Shown: piece by piece, positions 51,068-56,054 of the stretch
How positions within the stretch are numbered: position 1 is the stretch's first letter
Layout of the letters: every line of letters begins with the position of its first letter
Assembly (NCBI GenBank): GCA_025594325.1
Contig: JANHCV010000011.1
Coordinates: forward strand, 1,116,001 to 1,180,000
Length of the DNA stretch: 64,000 nt
Source of the DNA: Blastocladiella emersonii ATCC 22665
Taxonomy: Eukaryota; Fungi; Blastocladiomycota
Reading direction: 5' to 3'
Translations under genes and position numbers: made by a program
The notes under the pieces: generated by a model
Database searches by the model: none
What the model saw: only the letters and a program-made list of their open reading frames with translations
Told to the model about the DNA's origin: nothing

Positions 51068-54000
51068 ATGAGCGGCCGCGAACCGCACGCGGCGATGGTC
51101 GTGGCCCGCGTCGTGCGAGCGCTGCTCGTCGCGGTCTCGATGTTCACGATAGTTGCGAACGCACAATGTAAGAGCTGTCCGTATTCGCAAACCGCTCGGC
51201 GCTCACAATGCACGCGCGATTCTAGCCTCTATCACATACTACGTCAACCCGCAGTCCAGCGGGAGCAGCCCGACGGGCACCGCGACGAACCCGTACGCCT
51301 CGCTGGCGCAGGCATGGACCGCCGCGTCCTCTGCGCCCGCGGGCTCGACCGTCACCCTGTTCCTCGCCTCGGGCGTCTACACCATCCCAAAGACGCAGAT
51401 CACGTTCCCCGCGACCCTCCGCCTCGCACACGCTCCGACCGTCCCCGGCACCACGGTCCAGGTGACCCCCGAACCGCTGCTCACGGGTGACGCCGAGCTC
51501 GCTGTCCCCAACATCGTGGTCCCCGGCACCGCGGGGCTCGCGTGGACGGGGATCTCGTTCGTCGGGTTCACGCACAGTGGCGCAGGGACGGGAGCCGCGT
51601 GGAGCGTCATGTCCGCGACCGACTCGGCGGCCATTGCGCTCGTCAACTGCACCGTGACGGGGTCCGACAGCGCACCGTCGTCGAGTTTCCGAGTCTCGGC
51701 GTCCGATTCGGCAAGTGTCACGGTCCTGGCGACGCGGTTCGCGCAGACCCGCGTCGAGCTCGCCGTCGATGGCGCGGCGGGGCTCGCGGTCCGCGACTCG
51801 GCGTTCACTGGAGTGAAGCCAGTGAGTAAGAGTATCGTTGCGGCGGCGGGGTCGGCGCAGGTCGTGCTCGAGCGGACAAGCGTCAAGGGTACGTGTTCTC
51901 TCTCCCTCTTTCGTGCTCTGAATGATGGCTGACGCGACAACGAGCGTAGCCTCGGTCGGCACCGTGTTCGGCCTGTCGTCGAGCGCGACGCTGCAGTCGA
52001 CGGGCGTGACCCTCTCCCAAATCTCGTGCGAGTCGGCCGCGTTCGGGATCATCACCATCAACGACGCGGCGTCGGCTACGCTGACGGGCGCGAGCATCAC
52101 CGACATCTCGGCGGCGCAGGGCGCGTCGTGCGCGAGCGGTCTGCTCGGCCTTTTCGACACAACGCAGCTGACGCTCGCGCAGTCGACCGTGGCGGACGTG
52201 CACGGGCGCCTCATCTACGGCGACGGGACGAGCACCGCGACGCTCGCCGACTCCTCGCTCGCGCGCGTCGCCGAGGTCGACGGCGTGCAGTACCTGATCT
52301 CGATGCGCACGGGCGCGTCGGTCGTGGCCCGCCGCAGCACGTTCATGGACGTGTCCGGGTCGTGGATCGCCATCGACAGCTCGCTCGTCCAGCTCGTCGA
52401 CTCGGTGCTCACCAACACCGTGTGCCCGGCGTCCAAGTCCTTCTGGCTGTTCATGGCGGGCAGCGCGCGGTTCAGCATGGCCGGGTCGACGATCACGGGC
52501 GGCACAAGACAGAGCAAGCCGTGCATGATGGTGCAGGGCGGCGACGCCACGACCGTCGCGCTCGCGCAGTCGACGATCAAGAACCTCGTGTGCCGCACGA
52601 CCTGCGTCCAGTGCGCCGGCGGGTGCCTGACGACCATGGACCGCGTCAATATCACGGGCGTCACGGTCAACGAGCCCAACGGGATCGTGTCCCTGCTCGG
52701 CAGCCAGCCGCACGTCCTCTCGGGCGTCCGCGCCTCGGGGAACGGCGGCGGGACCTCGGGCACCGCCAACGTCATCACCGTGACCGCAACGTCGGCCACC
52801 ATCGACGCGTCGCGGTTCGAGAAGAACCTGGTCCCGGCGCTCGGCGTCTCGCCCTCCGCGTCCGTCGTCGTCACCAACTCGGTGTTCGCGGGCAACGCCG
52901 TGCCCGCGGGCTACGGCGGCGCGATCGTGAACGAGGGCACACTCGCCGTCGCCGGGTCCAACTTCTCGGGCAACGCCGCGAAACTTGGCGGCGCCGTGTA
53001 CCACGCGTCCGGCGCGCTGACCGTGACCGACAGCGCCTTCACGAGCAACCTCGCGGGCAGCGACGGCGGCGCCCTGTACATTGCGGCGACGCCGGCCGTC
53101 GTCAACGGGACCGCGTTCCGCGGCAACCGCGCGAAACGCGGCGGCGCGTGGTTTGCGCCGTCGCCCGGCGTCGCGACGGGCGTCAGCGTCAACGACGCGC
53201 GGTACGCGCAGAACGCGCCGGCCGACTACGCGAGTTCCTTCCATGCGCTGGTCCCGGGTGCCGGCGCGACCGCGGCAGGCCTGACGGTGCGCACGGGCGG
53301 GACGCTCAACACGTCGGTCACGGTGCGCGCGCTCGACGTGTTCCGGCAGCCGTACGTGTTCGGCGGGCTCGACACGGTGCTCCTGGTGCGCGCCACGTCG
53401 CCGTCGCTCAAGCTGACGGGCGAGACGACCCAGGCCGTGTTCACGGGGTCCGCGACGTTCAAGGACCTCCAAGTGTACGGCGACCCGGGCACGCACGTCC
53501 TGCACTTTGGCCGCGTGGGCGCGGACGAGGTCGTCGATACGACGTCGGCCGTCGTCTCGGTCGCCGTCACCGTCGAGGCGTGCCCGAACGGCACCCACGT
53601 CGTCCAGCCGTCGCTCGTTTACGGGACTGCGTTCCCCGTATGCACCGCCATCGCGTGCCCGCTCGGCTGCCTGTACGGGACCTGTGCGAGCGCGGGCAAC
53701 TGTACCTGCGCGCCCGGGTACGACGGGATCGCGTGCGACCTGAGGGCGAATGCCGTCGACACGCTGACGTGGCGCGCACCCGCGGCTGCGTTCCCCGTCT
53801 TCTCGGTCGGTGTACGCGACGCGCTCATGGCGCAGGCCCGTGCCGTACTCGCGCGCATCGCGCCGCCCGGGACCACGGCGCAGTTCCGCTTCTTTACTCA
53901 ACAACGCGACGGTGGCGGCGTTGAGCTCAAGTTCGCCGTCCTCGACGACCGTGGCCAGGTGGTCCAGGCCGACGCGCTCGGCGTGATTGCGCGGCGCATG

Positions 54001-55386
54001 GCGGGCGTCGCCGAGTCGACGAAACCCGTGGCGTCGAGCTTCGGGTTCGCGTGGCCGCCGCCGCCGCAGTCCCTGTCGTCGGACGTGGCGCCTGTCGCCA
54101 AGCTGTCGGTCTCGCCCGCGATCCCCGAGGGCACGGGGATCCTGCTCGTGTACGCTGCCAGCGTCGCGCTCACGCTGTCCCTGTGGGCGTACGTGGCCGT
54201 GCGGCACCGCGCGCACCCGGTCGTCCGCACCAGCTCGCGCGCGTGGCTGACCGAGGTGGCCGTGGCGCTGGTCCTGGTGCACGTCTGGATCATGCTGGGC
54301 GCCGCGGTCCCAACCTCGGCGGCGTGCCAGGCGCAGTTCGCCGTCGGCGTGCTCGCGGCCGCGCTCACGGTCGCCGCGCTCGTCACCAAGACGGCCCAGT
54401 TCTTCCTCGTGTGCGAGAACCCGATCCTGTCCAAGCTCGCGGCCACGTCGCCGACGGCGGGCGTCCCGCTCGTCGCTATCAACGCGGGCGCCATCGCGCT
54501 CGAGCTCGTCCTCGCGATCGGCTGGCTCGCATCCGCCACCGCATCCCCGCGCGTCAACGTGTCCCCCGCGACCGACGCGTCGTATTGGCAGTGCACGCTC
54601 GGCGACGCCGGGTTCGCGTCGCCCGGGGCCCTCGTGTTCATTGTCGCGAACGCGGCCCTCGTCGCCGTGTCCCTGATCGTCCAGCTGCGCAGCCGCCGCG
54701 CTTTTTCGTTGTCCGAGGAGCCGCGCATCCTGTTCTTCGTACAGGCCAACATCGTCGGCGTCGTGTCGGTCCTCGCCGCGGTCCAGGCGGTCGCCTCGCT
54801 CGACGTCGTGGTCCGGTACGTCGTGCAGGCATTCGTCGTCCTGCTCGCCCTGCACCTCGCGTCGGGCGGGTTCCTCGGGTACAAGGCGGTCGTGATCCGG
54901 CGCGCGGCCGCGGGCCAGGGCTCGCTCAAGCGCGCGCTGCACGCTGCGGCGGCCGTTGCGGCTGCGAAACCGAAGCCCACCGCCGGTGGGCCCGCCCTGA
55001 CGACCGCGCCCGGCGCCCCCGCCGTCGCCGTGGCCAGCGACGGGACCGAGAACATCAGCGTGCTTGACCAGTCGAACCTCCTGGCCAGCTCGCTCGTCCC
55101 GATCCGCCGCACGCACCCGCTCGCGCAGTGGCGGCTCGCGTTCCTCGAGGTCGCCAAGGAGTACCACTACCTCTCGGTGACGTGCGGCAACGACGCCACC
55201 TTCTACGCGCTGCCGTGCGAGATTGTGGGGGATGCCGAGACGCTCGTGCTCGACCTGAGGTTCAAGTCGGGCGCCCGGCTCCACGTCCAGGCGCGCGACG
55301 CCGCGAATCTCGCTGAGTGGGAGCGCACGCTGCGCGGAGCCGGCGGGGTGCCGGCTACGGCGGGGAAGAAGGGCGGGCGCGGGTAA
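51068..55386 (+). CDS. Class C (7tm_3)-like GPCR with a Pmp/pectin-lyase-like beta-helix ectodomain, an EGF domain and a PH-like tail; introns ~51168-51225 and ~51889-51949
   Basis: Signal peptide; four FxxN..GGA(I/V/L/W) repeats; CPLGCLYGTC..C.CAPGYDGIAC; HPVVRTSS, LVTKT, YWQC, SEEPRI in seven TM helices; terminal strands plus LAEWERTL helix. Confidence 0.75.
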
Positions 55387-55511
55387 TGGACACGCGCGAA
55401 GCATGCAGCAGGCAGGTTGTAACACACTCATGTTCTCCCATACATTTGCTCTCTCTCCAAACCCTCTGCGCGACCCGTTGGTCGCGCACACCACAGCGCC
55501 TCCGCCCGCGC

Positions 55512-56054
55512 TTAAAGCTGGGCCGTCAGCTTAGCGTGCAGCTCCGCGAGCTTGTCCTTGTCGGCGGCAATGGGCGACCACTTGACGCCGAGCCCGTCGG
55601 CCTCGCGGCGCGGGATGATGTGGAAGTGCACGTGCGGGACCTCCTGGTGCGCGGCCTTGCCGTTGTTCTGCAGGATGTTGTAGTCGGTCATGCCCGTCGT
55701 GGCGCGCAGCGCCCCCACGATCTTCTTGGCCACGGGCATCACCTCGGCCAGCTGCGCGTCCGGGATCTCGTGCAGCTTCTCGCCGTGGTGCTTCGGGATC
55801 ACGAGCTAGAGAGCGGGGAGGTGAGCGCGGGCGGTGCTGCGGCGCGGCGGGAGGACGTACAGCGTGGCCCTCCGAGAGCGGACCAATGTCTACACACGAC
55901 GAGAGCGTCAGCCAAAGCTCGCAATGGCTCGAAGCGCGAGAGCAGATGACGCACCGAGGAACGAGTACACCGACTCGGTCTCGATCAGCCGGAACGACGG
56001 GATCTCCTTCTTGATGATGCGGCAGAAGATGCAAGACGCGGACGTGGCAGACAT
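55512..56054 (-). CDS. HNT1: HIT family nucleotide hydrolase (HINT1/Hnt1); 2 introns
   Basis: CIFCRIIKKEIPS, DIGPLSEGHA-LVIPK, QNNG..AHQEVPHVHFHIIP. Confidence 0.93.

What the first reader, a model, noticed from the sequence alone, without database searches (positions are those of the whole stretch)
51068..55386. Class C GPCR-like receptor with a Pmp-type beta-helix ectodomain, EGF and possible SEA modules, and a fused PH-like cytoplasmic domain
Seen: signal peptide, a long Ser/Thr/Val-rich beta-helix-like region with four FxxN/GGA(I/V/L/W) repeats (~52900-53160), an EGF-like unit (~53656-53736), a ~100-aa alpha/beta segment (~53760-54050), seven TM helices with GABA-B/class C hallmarks (HPVVRTSS, KT, WQC, E.RI), and a C-terminal beta-rich domain ending in a W-containing helix. 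Known: class C 7TM proteins with pectin-lyase-like and EGF ectodomains occur in anaerobic gut fungi, replacing the Venus flytrap domain. Inference: this may be a polysaccharide- or surface-sensing receptor whose PH-like tail adds lipid or effector coupling. I do not recognise that combination.
Basis: partly seen in the sequence, partly recalled or inferred. Interest (0 to 1): 0.75.

Follow-up and report, generated by a model that had tools for sequence, protein, structure and literature searches.

The report
Fungal class C receptor with PH tail
This is a real three-exon gene of the water mould Blastocladiella emersonii for a 1399-residue surface receptor that joins an adhesin-like beta-helix outside the cell to a glutamate-receptor-type seven-helix membrane domain and a pleckstrin-homology (PH) domain inside; the design is conserved across its fungal phylum, and I found no paper describing it.

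Summary
The gene has three exons: 51068-51167, 51226-51888 and 51950-55386 on the + strand. It encodes the 1399-aa NCBI "hypothetical protein H9P43_008413" of Blastocladiella emersonii.

- **Shown above threshold:** signal peptide, right-handed beta-helix (Pfam, above cut-off), seven TM helices and 7tm_3 (45.4 bits, cut-off 33.5). The nearest solved relatives are mGluRs, not GABA-B.
- **Shown by motif:** four Pmp-type FxxN/GGA repeats and an EGF signature. Both are below the Pfam cut-offs.
- **PH tail:** AF2 gives pLDDT 86.7 with seven strands and a C-terminal helix. All top structural hits are PH domains (Z 13.2). The helix Trp is invariant.
- **PH caveats:** no Pfam PH hit, and the canonical phosphoinositide-binding motif is absent.
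- **"SEA" segment:** a confident ferredoxin-like fold that resembles SEA and cadherin membrane-adjacent domains only weakly. It has no SEA HMM hit and no cleavage motif.
- **Conservation:** the whole architecture is collinear in Blastocladiella britannica, Allomyces and Sorochytrium. The PH-bearing 7TMs fall on one side of a well-supported branch.
- **Genome context:** the tail is unique in this genome. A paralog with the same ectodomain lacks it.
- **Literature:** beta-helix/EGF class C receptors are published for gut fungi. I found no description of a PH-tailed one.

Verdict: a new variant of a known kind. Function is inferred only.

The parts
51068..51167 (+). Exon 1: start codon and signal peptide (residues 1-33, plus the first base of codon 34)
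   Evidence: Hydrophobic segment at residues 7-33 and a GTAAGA donor at 51168. Matches P0001.
51168..51225 (+). Intron 1, 58 nt, phase 1, GT..AG
   Evidence: Removing it reproduces P0001 exactly.
51226..51888 (+). Exon 2: N-terminal cap and first coils of the right-handed beta-helix (YYVNP..NPYASL..G.TV.L..GVY motif)
   Evidence: Translation. Weak Pel9A-like beta-helix hit, E 0.02. Collinear with orthologs.
51889..51949 (+). Intron 2, 61 nt, phase 1, GTACGT..CTGAC..TAG
51950..53166 (+). Beta-helix body (residues about 255-660), including the Pfam Beta_helix match
   Evidence: PF13229, E 9.2e-9, 35.6 bits against a 25.9 cut-off. Bacterial and eukaryotic Pmp-repeat proteins are the only non-family hits.
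52885..53151 (+). Four Pmp-type repeats (FxxN ... GGA[IVLW], period about 25 aa; residues 567-655)
   Evidence: Motif scan. Chlam_PMP is only 11.1 bits here but 24.1 bits in ortholog P0014.
53167..53631 (+). Beta-rich region after the Pmp repeats (residues 661-815); fold not tested
   Evidence: No Pfam hit on 53350-53760 other than EGF. ESM Atlas lead to ciliate Pmp-repeat proteins, 0.90. 31-44% identity to orthologs.
53641..53736 (+). EGF-like unit (residues 819-850)
   Evidence: Six-Cys pattern with C-x-C-x2-G-Y-x4-C. JAG1-like_EGF2 E 4.5e-5, 23.8 bits against 27. 50-54% identity to orthologs.
53758..54081 (+). Membrane-adjacent ferredoxin-like (SEA/MAD-like) domain (residues 858-965)
   Evidence: AF2 pLDDT 87.6, beta-alpha-beta-beta-alpha-beta. 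VIA Z 7.4 to PCDH15 MAD12, 7.2 to the MUC16 SEA, 6.8 to the TMPRSS6 SEA. Foldseek best E 0.015.
54130..54879 (+). Seven-transmembrane class C (7tm_3) domain (residues 982-1231)
   Evidence: PF00003, E 1.1e-11, 45.4 bits against 33.5. Seven hydrophobic segments. mGlu6 E 1.5e-4. Hallmark positions kept.
54880..55068 (+). Ala/Pro-rich, poorly conserved cytoplasmic linker (residues 1232-1294)
   Evidence: 14-22% identity to orthologs. Low pLDDT at the start of the tail model.
55069..55344 (+). C-terminal PH domain (residues about 1295-1386)
   Evidence: AF2 pLDDT 86.7, seven strands plus a C-helix. Foldseek top 50 are almost all PH domains, best E 1.9e-4. VIA Z 13.2, rmsd 2.2 A over 89 aa to the pleckstrin C-PH. 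Invariant Trp 1378.
55345..55386 (+). Short basic C-terminus (..AGKKGGRG) and TAA/TAG-type stop at 55384-55386
   Evidence: Not conserved.

Best explanation
The locus encodes one member of an orthologous receptor family restricted, as far as the searches show, to Blastocladiomycota. From N- to C-terminus it carries: a signal peptide; a long right-handed, Pmp-type beta-helix of the carbohydrate-binding/adhesin kind; a beta-rich spacer; one EGF unit; a ferredoxin-like membrane-adjacent domain; a divergent class C (7tm_3) seven-helix bundle; a flexible linker of about 60 aa; and a PH domain.

Shown: the architecture, the folds of the two modelled domains, and conservation and collinearity across Blastocladiella, Allomyces and Sorochytrium. 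Also shown: the PH-bearing 7TM domains fall on one side of a single branch of a midpoint-rooted tree.

Inferred: the beta-helix ectodomain binds an extracellular polysaccharide or surface, in place of the Venus-flytrap of animal class C receptors. The 7TM bundle transmits this inward. It keeps the TM3 Lys, the Glu before TM6, the TM3-ECL2 cysteines and the TM7 Lys. The tethered PH domain then acts as a built-in docking module. It lacks the K-Xn-(K/R)-X-R phosphoinositide signature and is near neutral. I therefore consider it more likely to bind a protein partner (G-beta-gamma, as the GRK2 PH domain does, another effector, or the receptor's own loops) or to give weak, non-specific membrane apposition than to read a specific phosphoinositide. 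The genome has the G-alpha subunits needed for classical coupling.
For: Gene model and identity to P0001. 7tm_3 and Beta_helix above the Pfam cut-offs. mGluR alignments through ICL1, the TM3 Cys and TM3 K-T. Hallmark columns shared with 31 other class C receptors, mostly of zoosporic fungi. PH fold: AF2 pLDDT 86.7, Foldseek top hits all PH, Z 13.2. The best PDB sequence hit is the PLEKHB1 PH domain, aligned through the C-helix Trp, E 0.66. UniRef names the Allomyces ortholog P0016 'PH domain-containing protein'. Orthologs with the tail: P0008, P0009, P0010, P0011, P0012, P0013, P0015, P0016, P0017, P0051. All domains are collinear. The PH domain is 34-44% identical, better than the 7TM (23-36%) and the linker (14-22%). 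PH-bearing 7TMs sit on one side of a branch with support 99/96. About 8-9 G-alpha loci in the genome. Basic motif absent and net charge -4 to +4 across 10 of the 11 sequences, the exception being the unidentified P0013 at +9. Published precedent for pectin-lyase-fold/EGF ectodomains on fungal class C receptors (PMC5168858).
Against: No ligand, expression or coupling data exist, so every functional step is inference. The 7tm_3 score is low: 45 bits, against 110-165 bits for the other class C receptors I scored, fungal and otherwise. The bundle is therefore divergent and might not couple to G proteins. No Pfam PH model matches any family member. The beta-helix has no match to a specific lyase or lectin family, so 'polysaccharide binding' rests on fold class only. 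The AF2 alignments are shallow (11 and 7 sequences). A non-canonical lipid site on the PH domain cannot be excluded from sequence.
Confidence: 0.6

Rival explanations
1. The PH tail is a genuine phosphoinositide sensor. It anchors or gates the receptor according to local PIP2/PIP3 or another anionic lipid, coupling ligand sensing to membrane lipid state or to a polarised membrane domain of the zoospore.
For: The top structural neighbours include many inositol-phosphate-bound PH domains: pleckstrin C-PH, ArhGAP9, Akt, DAPP1, TAPP1. An Arg at the end of beta1 and an Arg after the beta2 Trp are mostly conserved. The domain is tethered close to the membrane.
Against: The K-Xn-(K/R)-X-R signature is incomplete in every ortholog: the position two residues after the beta2 Arg is A, C, G, T or P, never basic. 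The next residues are a conserved acidic E-V-E. Net charge is -4 to +4 in 10 of the 11 sequences. From general knowledge, most PH domains do not bind phosphoinositides specifically.
Confidence: 0.2
2. The protein is mainly an adhesin or cell-surface anchor. The divergent 7TM bundle serves as a membrane anchor and does not activate G proteins. The PH domain links the adhesin to cortical or cytoskeletal proteins.
For: Pmp-type beta-helices are adhesins in Chlamydia (general knowledge). The best structural matches of the juxtamembrane domain are the membrane-adjacent domains of the adhesion proteins PCDH15 and CDH23, and SEA domains. The 7tm_3 score is far lower than for the other class C receptors scored. 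Structural neighbours of the PH domain include cytoskeletal linkers such as kindlin.
Against: The class C microswitch positions are conserved across the family: TM3 K, E before TM6, TM7 K and the TM3-ECL2 Cys pair. That is unexpected for a mere anchor. The 7TM is under constraint, 23-36% identical across genera with no indel disruption.
Confidence: 0.15
3. The 7TM-PH junction is an annotation or assembly artefact that fuses two neighbouring genes.
For: At about 70% GC, long spurious ORFs are common. An antisense ORF of 1203 aa overlaps the gene.
Against: The 7TM, linker and PH lie in one ORF without a stop. The same junction occurs in independently assembled genomes of B. britannica, Allomyces arbusculus and Sorochytrium, and in an unidentified Logan contig.
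Confidence: 0.02

Closest known systems
Class C GPCRs of anaerobic gut fungi (Neocallimastigomycota) with pectin-lyase-fold / parallel beta-helix and EGF ectodomains (Seppala et al. 2016, PMC5168858)
   Same: A 7tm_3 bundle preceded by a very long ectodomain built from a right-handed beta-helix, sometimes with an EGF unit, in place of the ANF/Venus-flytrap domain and without NCD3G.
   Different: That paper mentions no cytoplasmic PH domain ('PH domain' 0 and 'pleckstrin' 0 occurrences). This family is from a different phylum. It also has a membrane-adjacent ferredoxin-like domain and a PH tail. I did not test orthology to the gut-fungal receptors.
Metabotropic glutamate receptors (animal class C GPCRs)
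   Same: They are the best solved sequence relatives of the 7TM (mGlu6 E 1.5e-4, mGlu1 2.6e-3). ICL1 P-V-V-[KR]-x-S, the TM3 Cys and TM3 K-T are aligned.
   Different: No Venus-flytrap and no nine-Cys domain. Only about the first four helices align by phmmer. mGluR tails recruit a PH-like fold in trans (the Homer EVH1-mGluR peptide complex 1ddv is a structural neighbour of this tail, Z 11.1). Here a PH fold is fused in cis.
GPCR-bigrams of oomycetes and other protists (GPCR-PIPK, -INPP, -AC, -PDE, -TKL; PMC6033456, PMC5784254)
   Same: An N-terminal 7TM receptor is covalently fused to a C-terminal signalling domain, which may short-cut coupling.
   Different: Bigrams are defined by a catalytic accessory domain, and PH is not catalytic. 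Neither paper mentions a PH accessory domain, class C or Blastocladiomycota.
PH domain of GRK2 and classical PH domains (pleckstrin C-PH, evectin-2, ArhGAP9)
   Same: The same seven-strand sandwich with a C-terminal helix and its invariant Trp. GRK2's PH domain works at activated GPCRs by binding G-beta-gamma and lipid (general knowledge).
   Different: 7-20% sequence identity, no Pfam PH hit, and no canonical inositol-phosphate motif. Any G-beta-gamma binding is untested.
SEA domains and cadherin membrane-adjacent domains (MUC16 SEA 1ivz; PCDH15 MAD12; CDH23 MAD28)
   Same: An extracellular ferredoxin-like beta-alpha-beta-beta-alpha-beta module placed directly before the membrane.
   Different: Z is only 6.5-7.4, tied with RRMs and Nup54. 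There is no SEA HMM hit and no G/SVVV autoproteolysis motif.

Membership tests
Class C GPCR 7TM domain (Pfam 7tm_3, PF00003) | Profile match above the curated gathering score | tested here: met
   E 1.1e-11, 45.4 bits against 33.5, profile positions 6-239 of 251. Orthologs score 43-60 bits, except P0013 at 23.4 and P0009 with no hit at E 0.01.
Class C GPCR 7TM domain (Pfam 7tm_3, PF00003) | Seven transmembrane helices with an extracellular N-terminus | tested here: met
   Seven hydrophobic segments between residues 982 and 1231, plus an N-terminal signal peptide. This is a Kyte-Doolittle scan only; no dedicated topology predictor was available.
Class C GPCR 7TM domain (Pfam 7tm_3, PF00003) | Conserved TM3-ECL2 cysteine pair, TM3 Lys, Glu before TM6, Lys at the end of TM7 | tested here: met
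   C1047 aligns to the mGlu6/mGlu1 TM3 Cys and K1067 to the K of 'TKT'. The ECL2 C1136, the E-P-R before TM6 and the Y-K at the TM7 end align with conserved columns of 31 other class C receptors, mostly of zoosporic fungi.
Canonical animal class C receptor (mGluR/CaSR/TAS1R type) | ANF_receptor (Venus-flytrap) ligand-binding domain and NCD3G nine-Cys domain | tested here: not met
   No ANF_receptor or NCD3G hit at E up to 1. A beta-helix ectodomain stands in their place.
Class C GPCR (function) | Ligand-dependent activation of heterotrimeric G proteins | not testable with these tools
   Only the presence of about 8-9 G-alpha loci in the genome was shown.
PH domain (pleckstrin homology) | Seven-stranded antiparallel beta-sandwich capped by a C-terminal alpha-helix | tested here: met
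   AF2 with an 11-sequence alignment: pLDDT 86.7, pTM 0.76, strands E19-28, 36-43, 48-53, 56-61, 65-69, 74-78, 84-88 and helix 92-105.
PH domain (pleckstrin homology) | Structural match to solved PH domains that stands above other folds | tested here: met
   The Foldseek top 50 are almost all PH domains, best E 1.9e-4. VIA Z 13.2, rmsd 2.2 A over 89 aa to 2i5c; 719 chains at Z of 8 or more.
PH domain (pleckstrin homology) | Invariant Trp in the C-terminal helix | tested here: met
   W98 of the fragment (residue 1378) is invariant in 11 sequences. It aligns to the PLEKHB1 helix Trp.
PH domain (pleckstrin homology) | Sequence-profile match (Pfam PF00169 or related PH models) | tested here: not met
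   No Pfam family at E up to 10 for the tail or for six orthologous fragments. UniRef nevertheless names P0016 'PH domain-containing protein', presumably from another profile.
Phosphoinositide-binding PH subclass | K-Xn-(K/R)-X-R basic motif in beta1-beta2 (definition from general knowledge) | tested here: not met
   Beta2 reads W-R-x-[A/C/G/T/P] followed by E-V-E. Net charge is -4 to +4 in 10 of 11 sequences, with P0013 at +9.
SEA domain (PF01390) | Profile match and G/SVVV autoproteolysis site | tested here: not met
   No Pfam hit at E up to 10 for 53740-54080. The beta2-beta3 turn reads DGGGVELKF, and no conserved G-S is seen in the orthologs.
SEA domain (PF01390) | Ferredoxin-like alpha/beta sandwich next to the membrane, structurally matching SEA | tested here: inconclusive
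   The fold is beta-alpha-beta-beta-alpha-beta at pLDDT 87.6. Z is 7.2 to the MUC16 SEA, 6.8 to the TMPRSS6 SEA and 6.5 to the GPR126 SEA, but this ties with MAD12, Nup54 and RRMs, within the range the tool calls common.
Right-handed parallel beta-helix / Chlamydia Pmp repeats | Beta_helix profile above cut-off; repeated FxxN and GGA[ILV] motifs | tested here: met
   PF13229 at 35.6 bits against 25.9. Four FxxN/GGA units. Chlam_PMP itself is below cut-off here (11.1 against 20.6) and above it in ortholog P0014 (24.1).
EGF-like domain | Six-cysteine pattern with C-x-C-x2-[GP]-[FYW]-x4-8-C; profile match | tested here: inconclusive
   The pattern is present. The best Pfam EGF model gives 23.8 bits against 27.
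GPCR-bigram (van den Hoogen et al.) | [quoted passage not shown] | tested here: not met
   The accessory domain is a PH fold with no catalytic family match. Definition read in PMC6033456.

The most novel reading that the evidence does not exclude
A PH domain fused in cis to a class C receptor is a built-in transducer. It would bind G-beta-gamma, another effector, or the receptor's own cytoplasmic face in a state-dependent way. That would give these zoosporic fungi a pre-assembled or G-alpha-independent signalling route from a glycan- or surface-sensing beta-helix. This would be a non-catalytic counterpart of the oomycete GPCR-bigrams, and a cis version of the mGluR-Homer (PH-like EVH1) pairing.
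Probability: 0.25. Interest if true: 0.65.

Novelty: new variant of a known kind. Interest (0 to 1): 0.5.

Why it matters
Class C receptors of early-diverging fungi swap their ectodomains freely. This family adds a conserved cytoplasmic module to that picture. A receptor carrying its own PH domain gives a simple, testable case of how domain fusion can rewire GPCR output. Blastocladiella is a long-standing model for zoospore sensing and differentiation, with a tractable life cycle. The PH domain is more conserved than the 7TM bundle, which argues that it is central to the protein's function. The family also gives a defined candidate for surface or polysaccharide sensing in a saprotrophic water mould. 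The practical lesson for the scan is that both word-indexed searches found no relatives, while the exhaustive search found the whole family.

Tried and rejected
- **Word-indexed homology searches.** I ran them on exon 3 and on residues 940-1399. They returned only the protein itself and bacterial Pmp-repeat proteins. This "no relatives" result was wrong, as the exhaustive phmmer search showed.
- **Pfam on the tail and on six orthologous fragments.** At E up to 10 no PH family appeared.
- **Sequence-level leads for the tail.** ESM Atlas gave a PH cluster at only 0.77, which is chance level. PDB phmmer gave PLEKHB1 PH at E 0.66. I kept both as leads only; the fold result decided.
- **Tail copies in the genome.** None were found: the best other hit has E 0.85.
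- **SEA membership.** Rejected as a family assignment, because there is no HMM hit, no cleavage motif and only middling Z.
- **GABA-B affinity of the 7TM.** Not supported: all 35 PDB hits are mGluRs.
- **Gene-fusion artefact.** Rejected.
- **The look-up of encoding contigs.** I therefore saw no genomic context or intron positions for the orthologs, and the organisms behind the Logan proteins P0013 and P0014/P0017 stay unknown.
- **Literature.** Gut-fungal GPCRs, fungal GRAFS, GPCR-bigrams, choanoflagellate GPCRs, and a phrase search for GPCR with "C-terminal PH domain" turned up no description of a 7TM-PH fusion. The library is incomplete, so this is absence in what was searched.
- **Handling of the spliced model.** Searches used exon references or the database's own record P0001. 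In one search a script joined the three exons only to test identity with P0001 and printed no sequence.

Full report
**What is there**

The window is about 70% G+C around the finding. At that composition long ORFs occur on both strands; an antisense ORF of 1203 aa spans 51883-55494. The + strand carries the real gene.

- The exons are 51068-51167, 51226-51888 and 51950-55386.
- They are separated by phase-1 GT..AG introns of 58 and 61 nt.
- The spliced translation is identical to a database record returned by the search tool: P0001, 1399 aa, [quoted passage not shown].
- The genome holds 32.65 Mb in 21 contigs.

On handling the spliced model: I searched by exon reference or with the database's own id P0001. 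One script joined the exons only to test identity with P0001.

**Checking each observed feature**

- **Signal peptide:** residues 7-33.
- **Beta-helix:** Pfam Beta_helix at 35.6 bits against a cut-off of 25.9. Exon 2 has an N-terminal cap of the YYVNP...NPYASL...GVY type, with a weak Pel9A-like hit at E 0.02.
- **Pmp repeats:** four FxxN/GGA[IVLW] units at residues 567-655 (52885-53151), about 25 aa apart. The Chlam_PMP model is below cut-off here (11.1 bits) but above it in an ortholog (24.1 bits). The only non-family full-length hits are Pmp-repeat proteins.
- **EGF:** six cysteines with C-x-C-x2-G-Y-x4-C at 53656-53736. The Pfam EGF models fall just under cut-off (23.8 against 27).
- **7TM:** 7tm_3 E 1.1e-11, 45.4 bits against 33.5, with seven hydrophobic segments between residues 982 and 1231.
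- **Nearest solved 7TM sequences:** all 35 PDB sequence hits are metabotropic glutamate receptors (mGlu6 E 1.5e-4). The alignment places HPVVRTSSR on the ICL1 motif TPIVRASGR, C1047 on the TM3 cysteine and ALVTKT on ALLTKT.
- **Hallmark positions:** I aligned 38 7TM domains. The family keeps the TM3 Lys/Arg, the ECL2 Cys, the Glu before TM6 (E-P-R here, N-E-S in the others) and the Lys at the end of TM7.

**The tail**

No Pfam model matches the tail, and no other copy exists in the genome. Two sequence-level leads pointed to PH but were not significant. The ESM Atlas top cluster scored 0.77. The best PDB phmmer hit was PLEKHB1 PH at E 0.66, aligned through the C-terminal helix Trp.

The exhaustive phmmer search with residues 862-1399 changed the picture. 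Ten other proteins carry a homologous tail:

- **B. britannica:** P0009, 1421 aa.
- **Allomyces arbusculus:** P0008, 1415 aa, and P0051.
- **A. javanicus:** P0010.
- **A. macrogynus:** P0012, P0015 and P0016. UniRef calls P0016 "PH domain-containing protein".
- **Sorochytrium milnesiophthora:** P0011, BLASTP E 1e-17.
- **Unidentified Logan assemblies:** P0013, and P0014 with P0017.

With this 11-sequence alignment AF2 gave a confident model:

- Mean pLDDT is 86.7 and pTM is 0.76.
- It has seven strands followed by one C-terminal helix.

Structure comparison agrees with a PH fold:

- **Foldseek against the PDB:** almost only PH domains at the top (GRK2, kindlin-3, evectin-2, pleckstrin C-PH, ArhGAP9), best E 1.9e-4.
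- **VIA-align:** Z 13.2, rmsd 2.2 A over 89 residues to pleckstrin C-PH, and 719 chains at Z of 8 or more.
- **Helix Trp:** W1378 is invariant across the family.

The tail is therefore a PH domain by fold and by its one signature residue, although not by Pfam profile.

The canonical phosphoinositide motif is missing in every member. Beta2 reads W-R-x-[A/C/G/T/P] followed by E-V-E. Net charge is -4 to +4 in 10 of the 11 sequences, with P0013 at +9.

**The "SEA" segment**

AF2 on residues 852-972 with seven sequences gave pLDDT 87.6 and a beta-alpha-beta-beta-alpha-beta fold. Foldseek found nothing below E 0.001. Its best hits were the PCDH15 membrane-adjacent domain MAD12 and the Nup54 ferredoxin-like domain, at E about 0.015.

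The Foldseek-independent search ranked these at the top:

| Match | Z |
|---|---|
| PCDH15 MAD12 | 7.4 |
| Nup54 | 7.4 |
| MUC16 SEA | 7.2 |
| TMPRSS6 SEA | 6.8 |
| CDH23 MAD28 | 6.8 |
| GPR126 SEA | 6.5 |

RRMs and other ferredoxin-like folds follow within one Z unit, in the range the tool warns is common. There is no SEA HMM hit and no G/SVVV site. I call it a ferredoxin-like membrane-adjacent domain that is SEA/MAD-like in fold and position. I do not call it a SEA family member.

**Conservation and origin**

All domains are collinear in the full-length orthologs. Identity to P0001 by domain:

| Domain | Identity to P0001 |
|---|---|
| EGF | 50-54% |
| PH | 34-44% |
| Pmp repeats | 35-42% |
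| SEA/MAD-like | 28-39% |
| 7TM | 23-36% |
| Linker | 14-22% |

The PH domain is thus better conserved than the membrane bundle.

I built a maximum-likelihood tree of 38 7TM domains. The seven PH-bearing sequences sit on one side of a branch with support 99/96, and in 98% of bootstrap trees. The root was at the midpoint only, and several branches are long (P0013, P0009), so "single origin" is likely rather than proven.

The genome's other beta-helix/EGF receptor is P0020 on contig C1. It has the same ectodomain order but no PH tail, and it falls elsewhere in the tree.

The remaining relatives carry other ectodomains and score 110-160 bits on 7tm_3:

- SBP_bac_1
- ANF_receptor
- Laminin_G_3
- FG-GAP

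Those that could be named come from Allomyces, Blastocladiella, the chytrids Phlyctochytrium and Gaertneriomyces, and the ichthyosporean Chromosphaera. The PH-bearing clade, at 43-60 bits, is the divergent one. The genome has 77 7tm_3 matches, which I estimate at 55 or more genes, and about 8-9 G-alpha loci.

**How it most likely works**

Shown: a type I-oriented receptor with a large beta-helix ectodomain, a class C bundle that keeps its microswitch positions, a flexible linker and a conserved PH domain.

Inferred:

- The beta-helix takes the place of the Venus-flytrap as the ligand- or surface-binding part. Polysaccharide or surface contact is the most natural ligand class for this fold, but no specific lyase or lectin family matched.
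- The PH domain, lacking the basic lipid-binding signature, probably docks a protein partner or the receptor's own cytoplasmic face. It may also provide weak membrane apposition.

Rivals: a true phosphoinositide sensor (0.2); an adhesin whose 7TM is only an anchor (0.15); an annotation artefact (0.02, effectively excluded).

**Comparison with what is known**

- **Gut-fungal class C receptors.** Seppala et al. 2016 (PMC5168858) describe these with pectin-lyase-fold, parallel beta-helix and EGF ectodomains, so that part of the architecture is published. The text contains no mention of PH or pleckstrin.
- **Fungal class C ectodomains.** Krishnan et al. 2012 (PMC3251606) list the N-terminal domains of fungal class C receptors, including those of Allomyces. 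They do not mention beta-helix or PH.
- **GPCR-bigrams.** The oomycete bigram papers define bigrams by catalytic C-terminal domains and do not list PH.
- **Choanoflagellate GPCRs.** A 2025 survey mentions pleckstrin only in the name of the DEP domain of GPR155.
- **Phrase search.** A search for GPCR with "C-terminal PH domain" returned only GRK2 and P-Rex papers.

Within the library searched, a 7tm_3-PH fusion is therefore undescribed. The proteins are deposited as "hypothetical", apart from one automatic UniRef name.

**Verdict**

The finding is a conserved, uncharacterised, phylum-restricted receptor family. I class it as a new variant of a known kind: fungal class C receptors with shuffled domains. 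It is moderately interesting (0.5). Domain shuffling around protist and fungal GPCRs is well known and PH is a promiscuous domain. But a conserved cis-fused PH on a class C receptor is unusual and directly testable.

**Limits**

- There is no expression or functional data.

Noticed in passing
window 51883-55494 (-): An antisense ORF of 1203 aa overlaps almost the whole gene. It is Arg/Gly/Asp-rich and has no family support. It looks like a by-product of about 70% G+C and strong GC3 codon use, not a gene.
   Followed up: partly
G000:C1:3770900-3776700 (L016, L018, L023; protein P0020, 1717 aa): This is the only other receptor in the genome that matched this protein's Pmp/EGF ectodomain as well as its 7TM. 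It has the same ectodomain order but no PH tail, and its 7TM groups with a chytrid SBP-type receptor rather than with the PH clade. That suggests either ectodomain shuffling or an old split followed by loss of the tail.
   Followed up: partly
whole genome G000: There are 77 7tm_3 matches, which I estimate at 55 or more genes, in a 32.65-Mb genome. Several lie in local clusters, e.g. C1:2868060-2874913, C19:497130-520682 and C1:1685999-1693416 (an inverted pair with identical scores).
   Followed up: no
window 55512-55802 (-): A 96-aa ORF fragment with an H-V-H-F-H-I-I histidine-triad (HIT) motif sits tail-to-tail about 125 bp after the receptor's stop codon. The intergenic space for two 3' ends is therefore very short.
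   Followed up: no
I did not examine it.
   Followed up: no
proteins P0008 and P0051 (Allomyces arbusculus GGF31_000096 and GGF31_000098); P0014 and P0017 (same 6608-bp Logan contig): In Allomyces a second, stand-alone PH-tail fragment lies two gene models away from the full-length ortholog. In the Logan contig the receptor body and the PH tail are called as two proteins. These are probably split gene models or tandem remnants.
   Followed up: no
P0001 residues 660-815 (window 53164-53631): The beta-rich spacer after the Pmp repeats resembles segments of ciliate Pmp-repeat proteins in the ESM Atlas (score 0.90, 206 shared features). This hints at a conserved eukaryotic Pmp-plus-spacer module.
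   Followed up: no
The word-indexed protein search returned no relatives for either the whole protein or the 7TM plus tail. The exhaustive phmmer search found ten tail-bearing relatives. Blank results from the word search are unreliable for this divergent, low-complexity-rich, high-GC proteome.
   Followed up: yes
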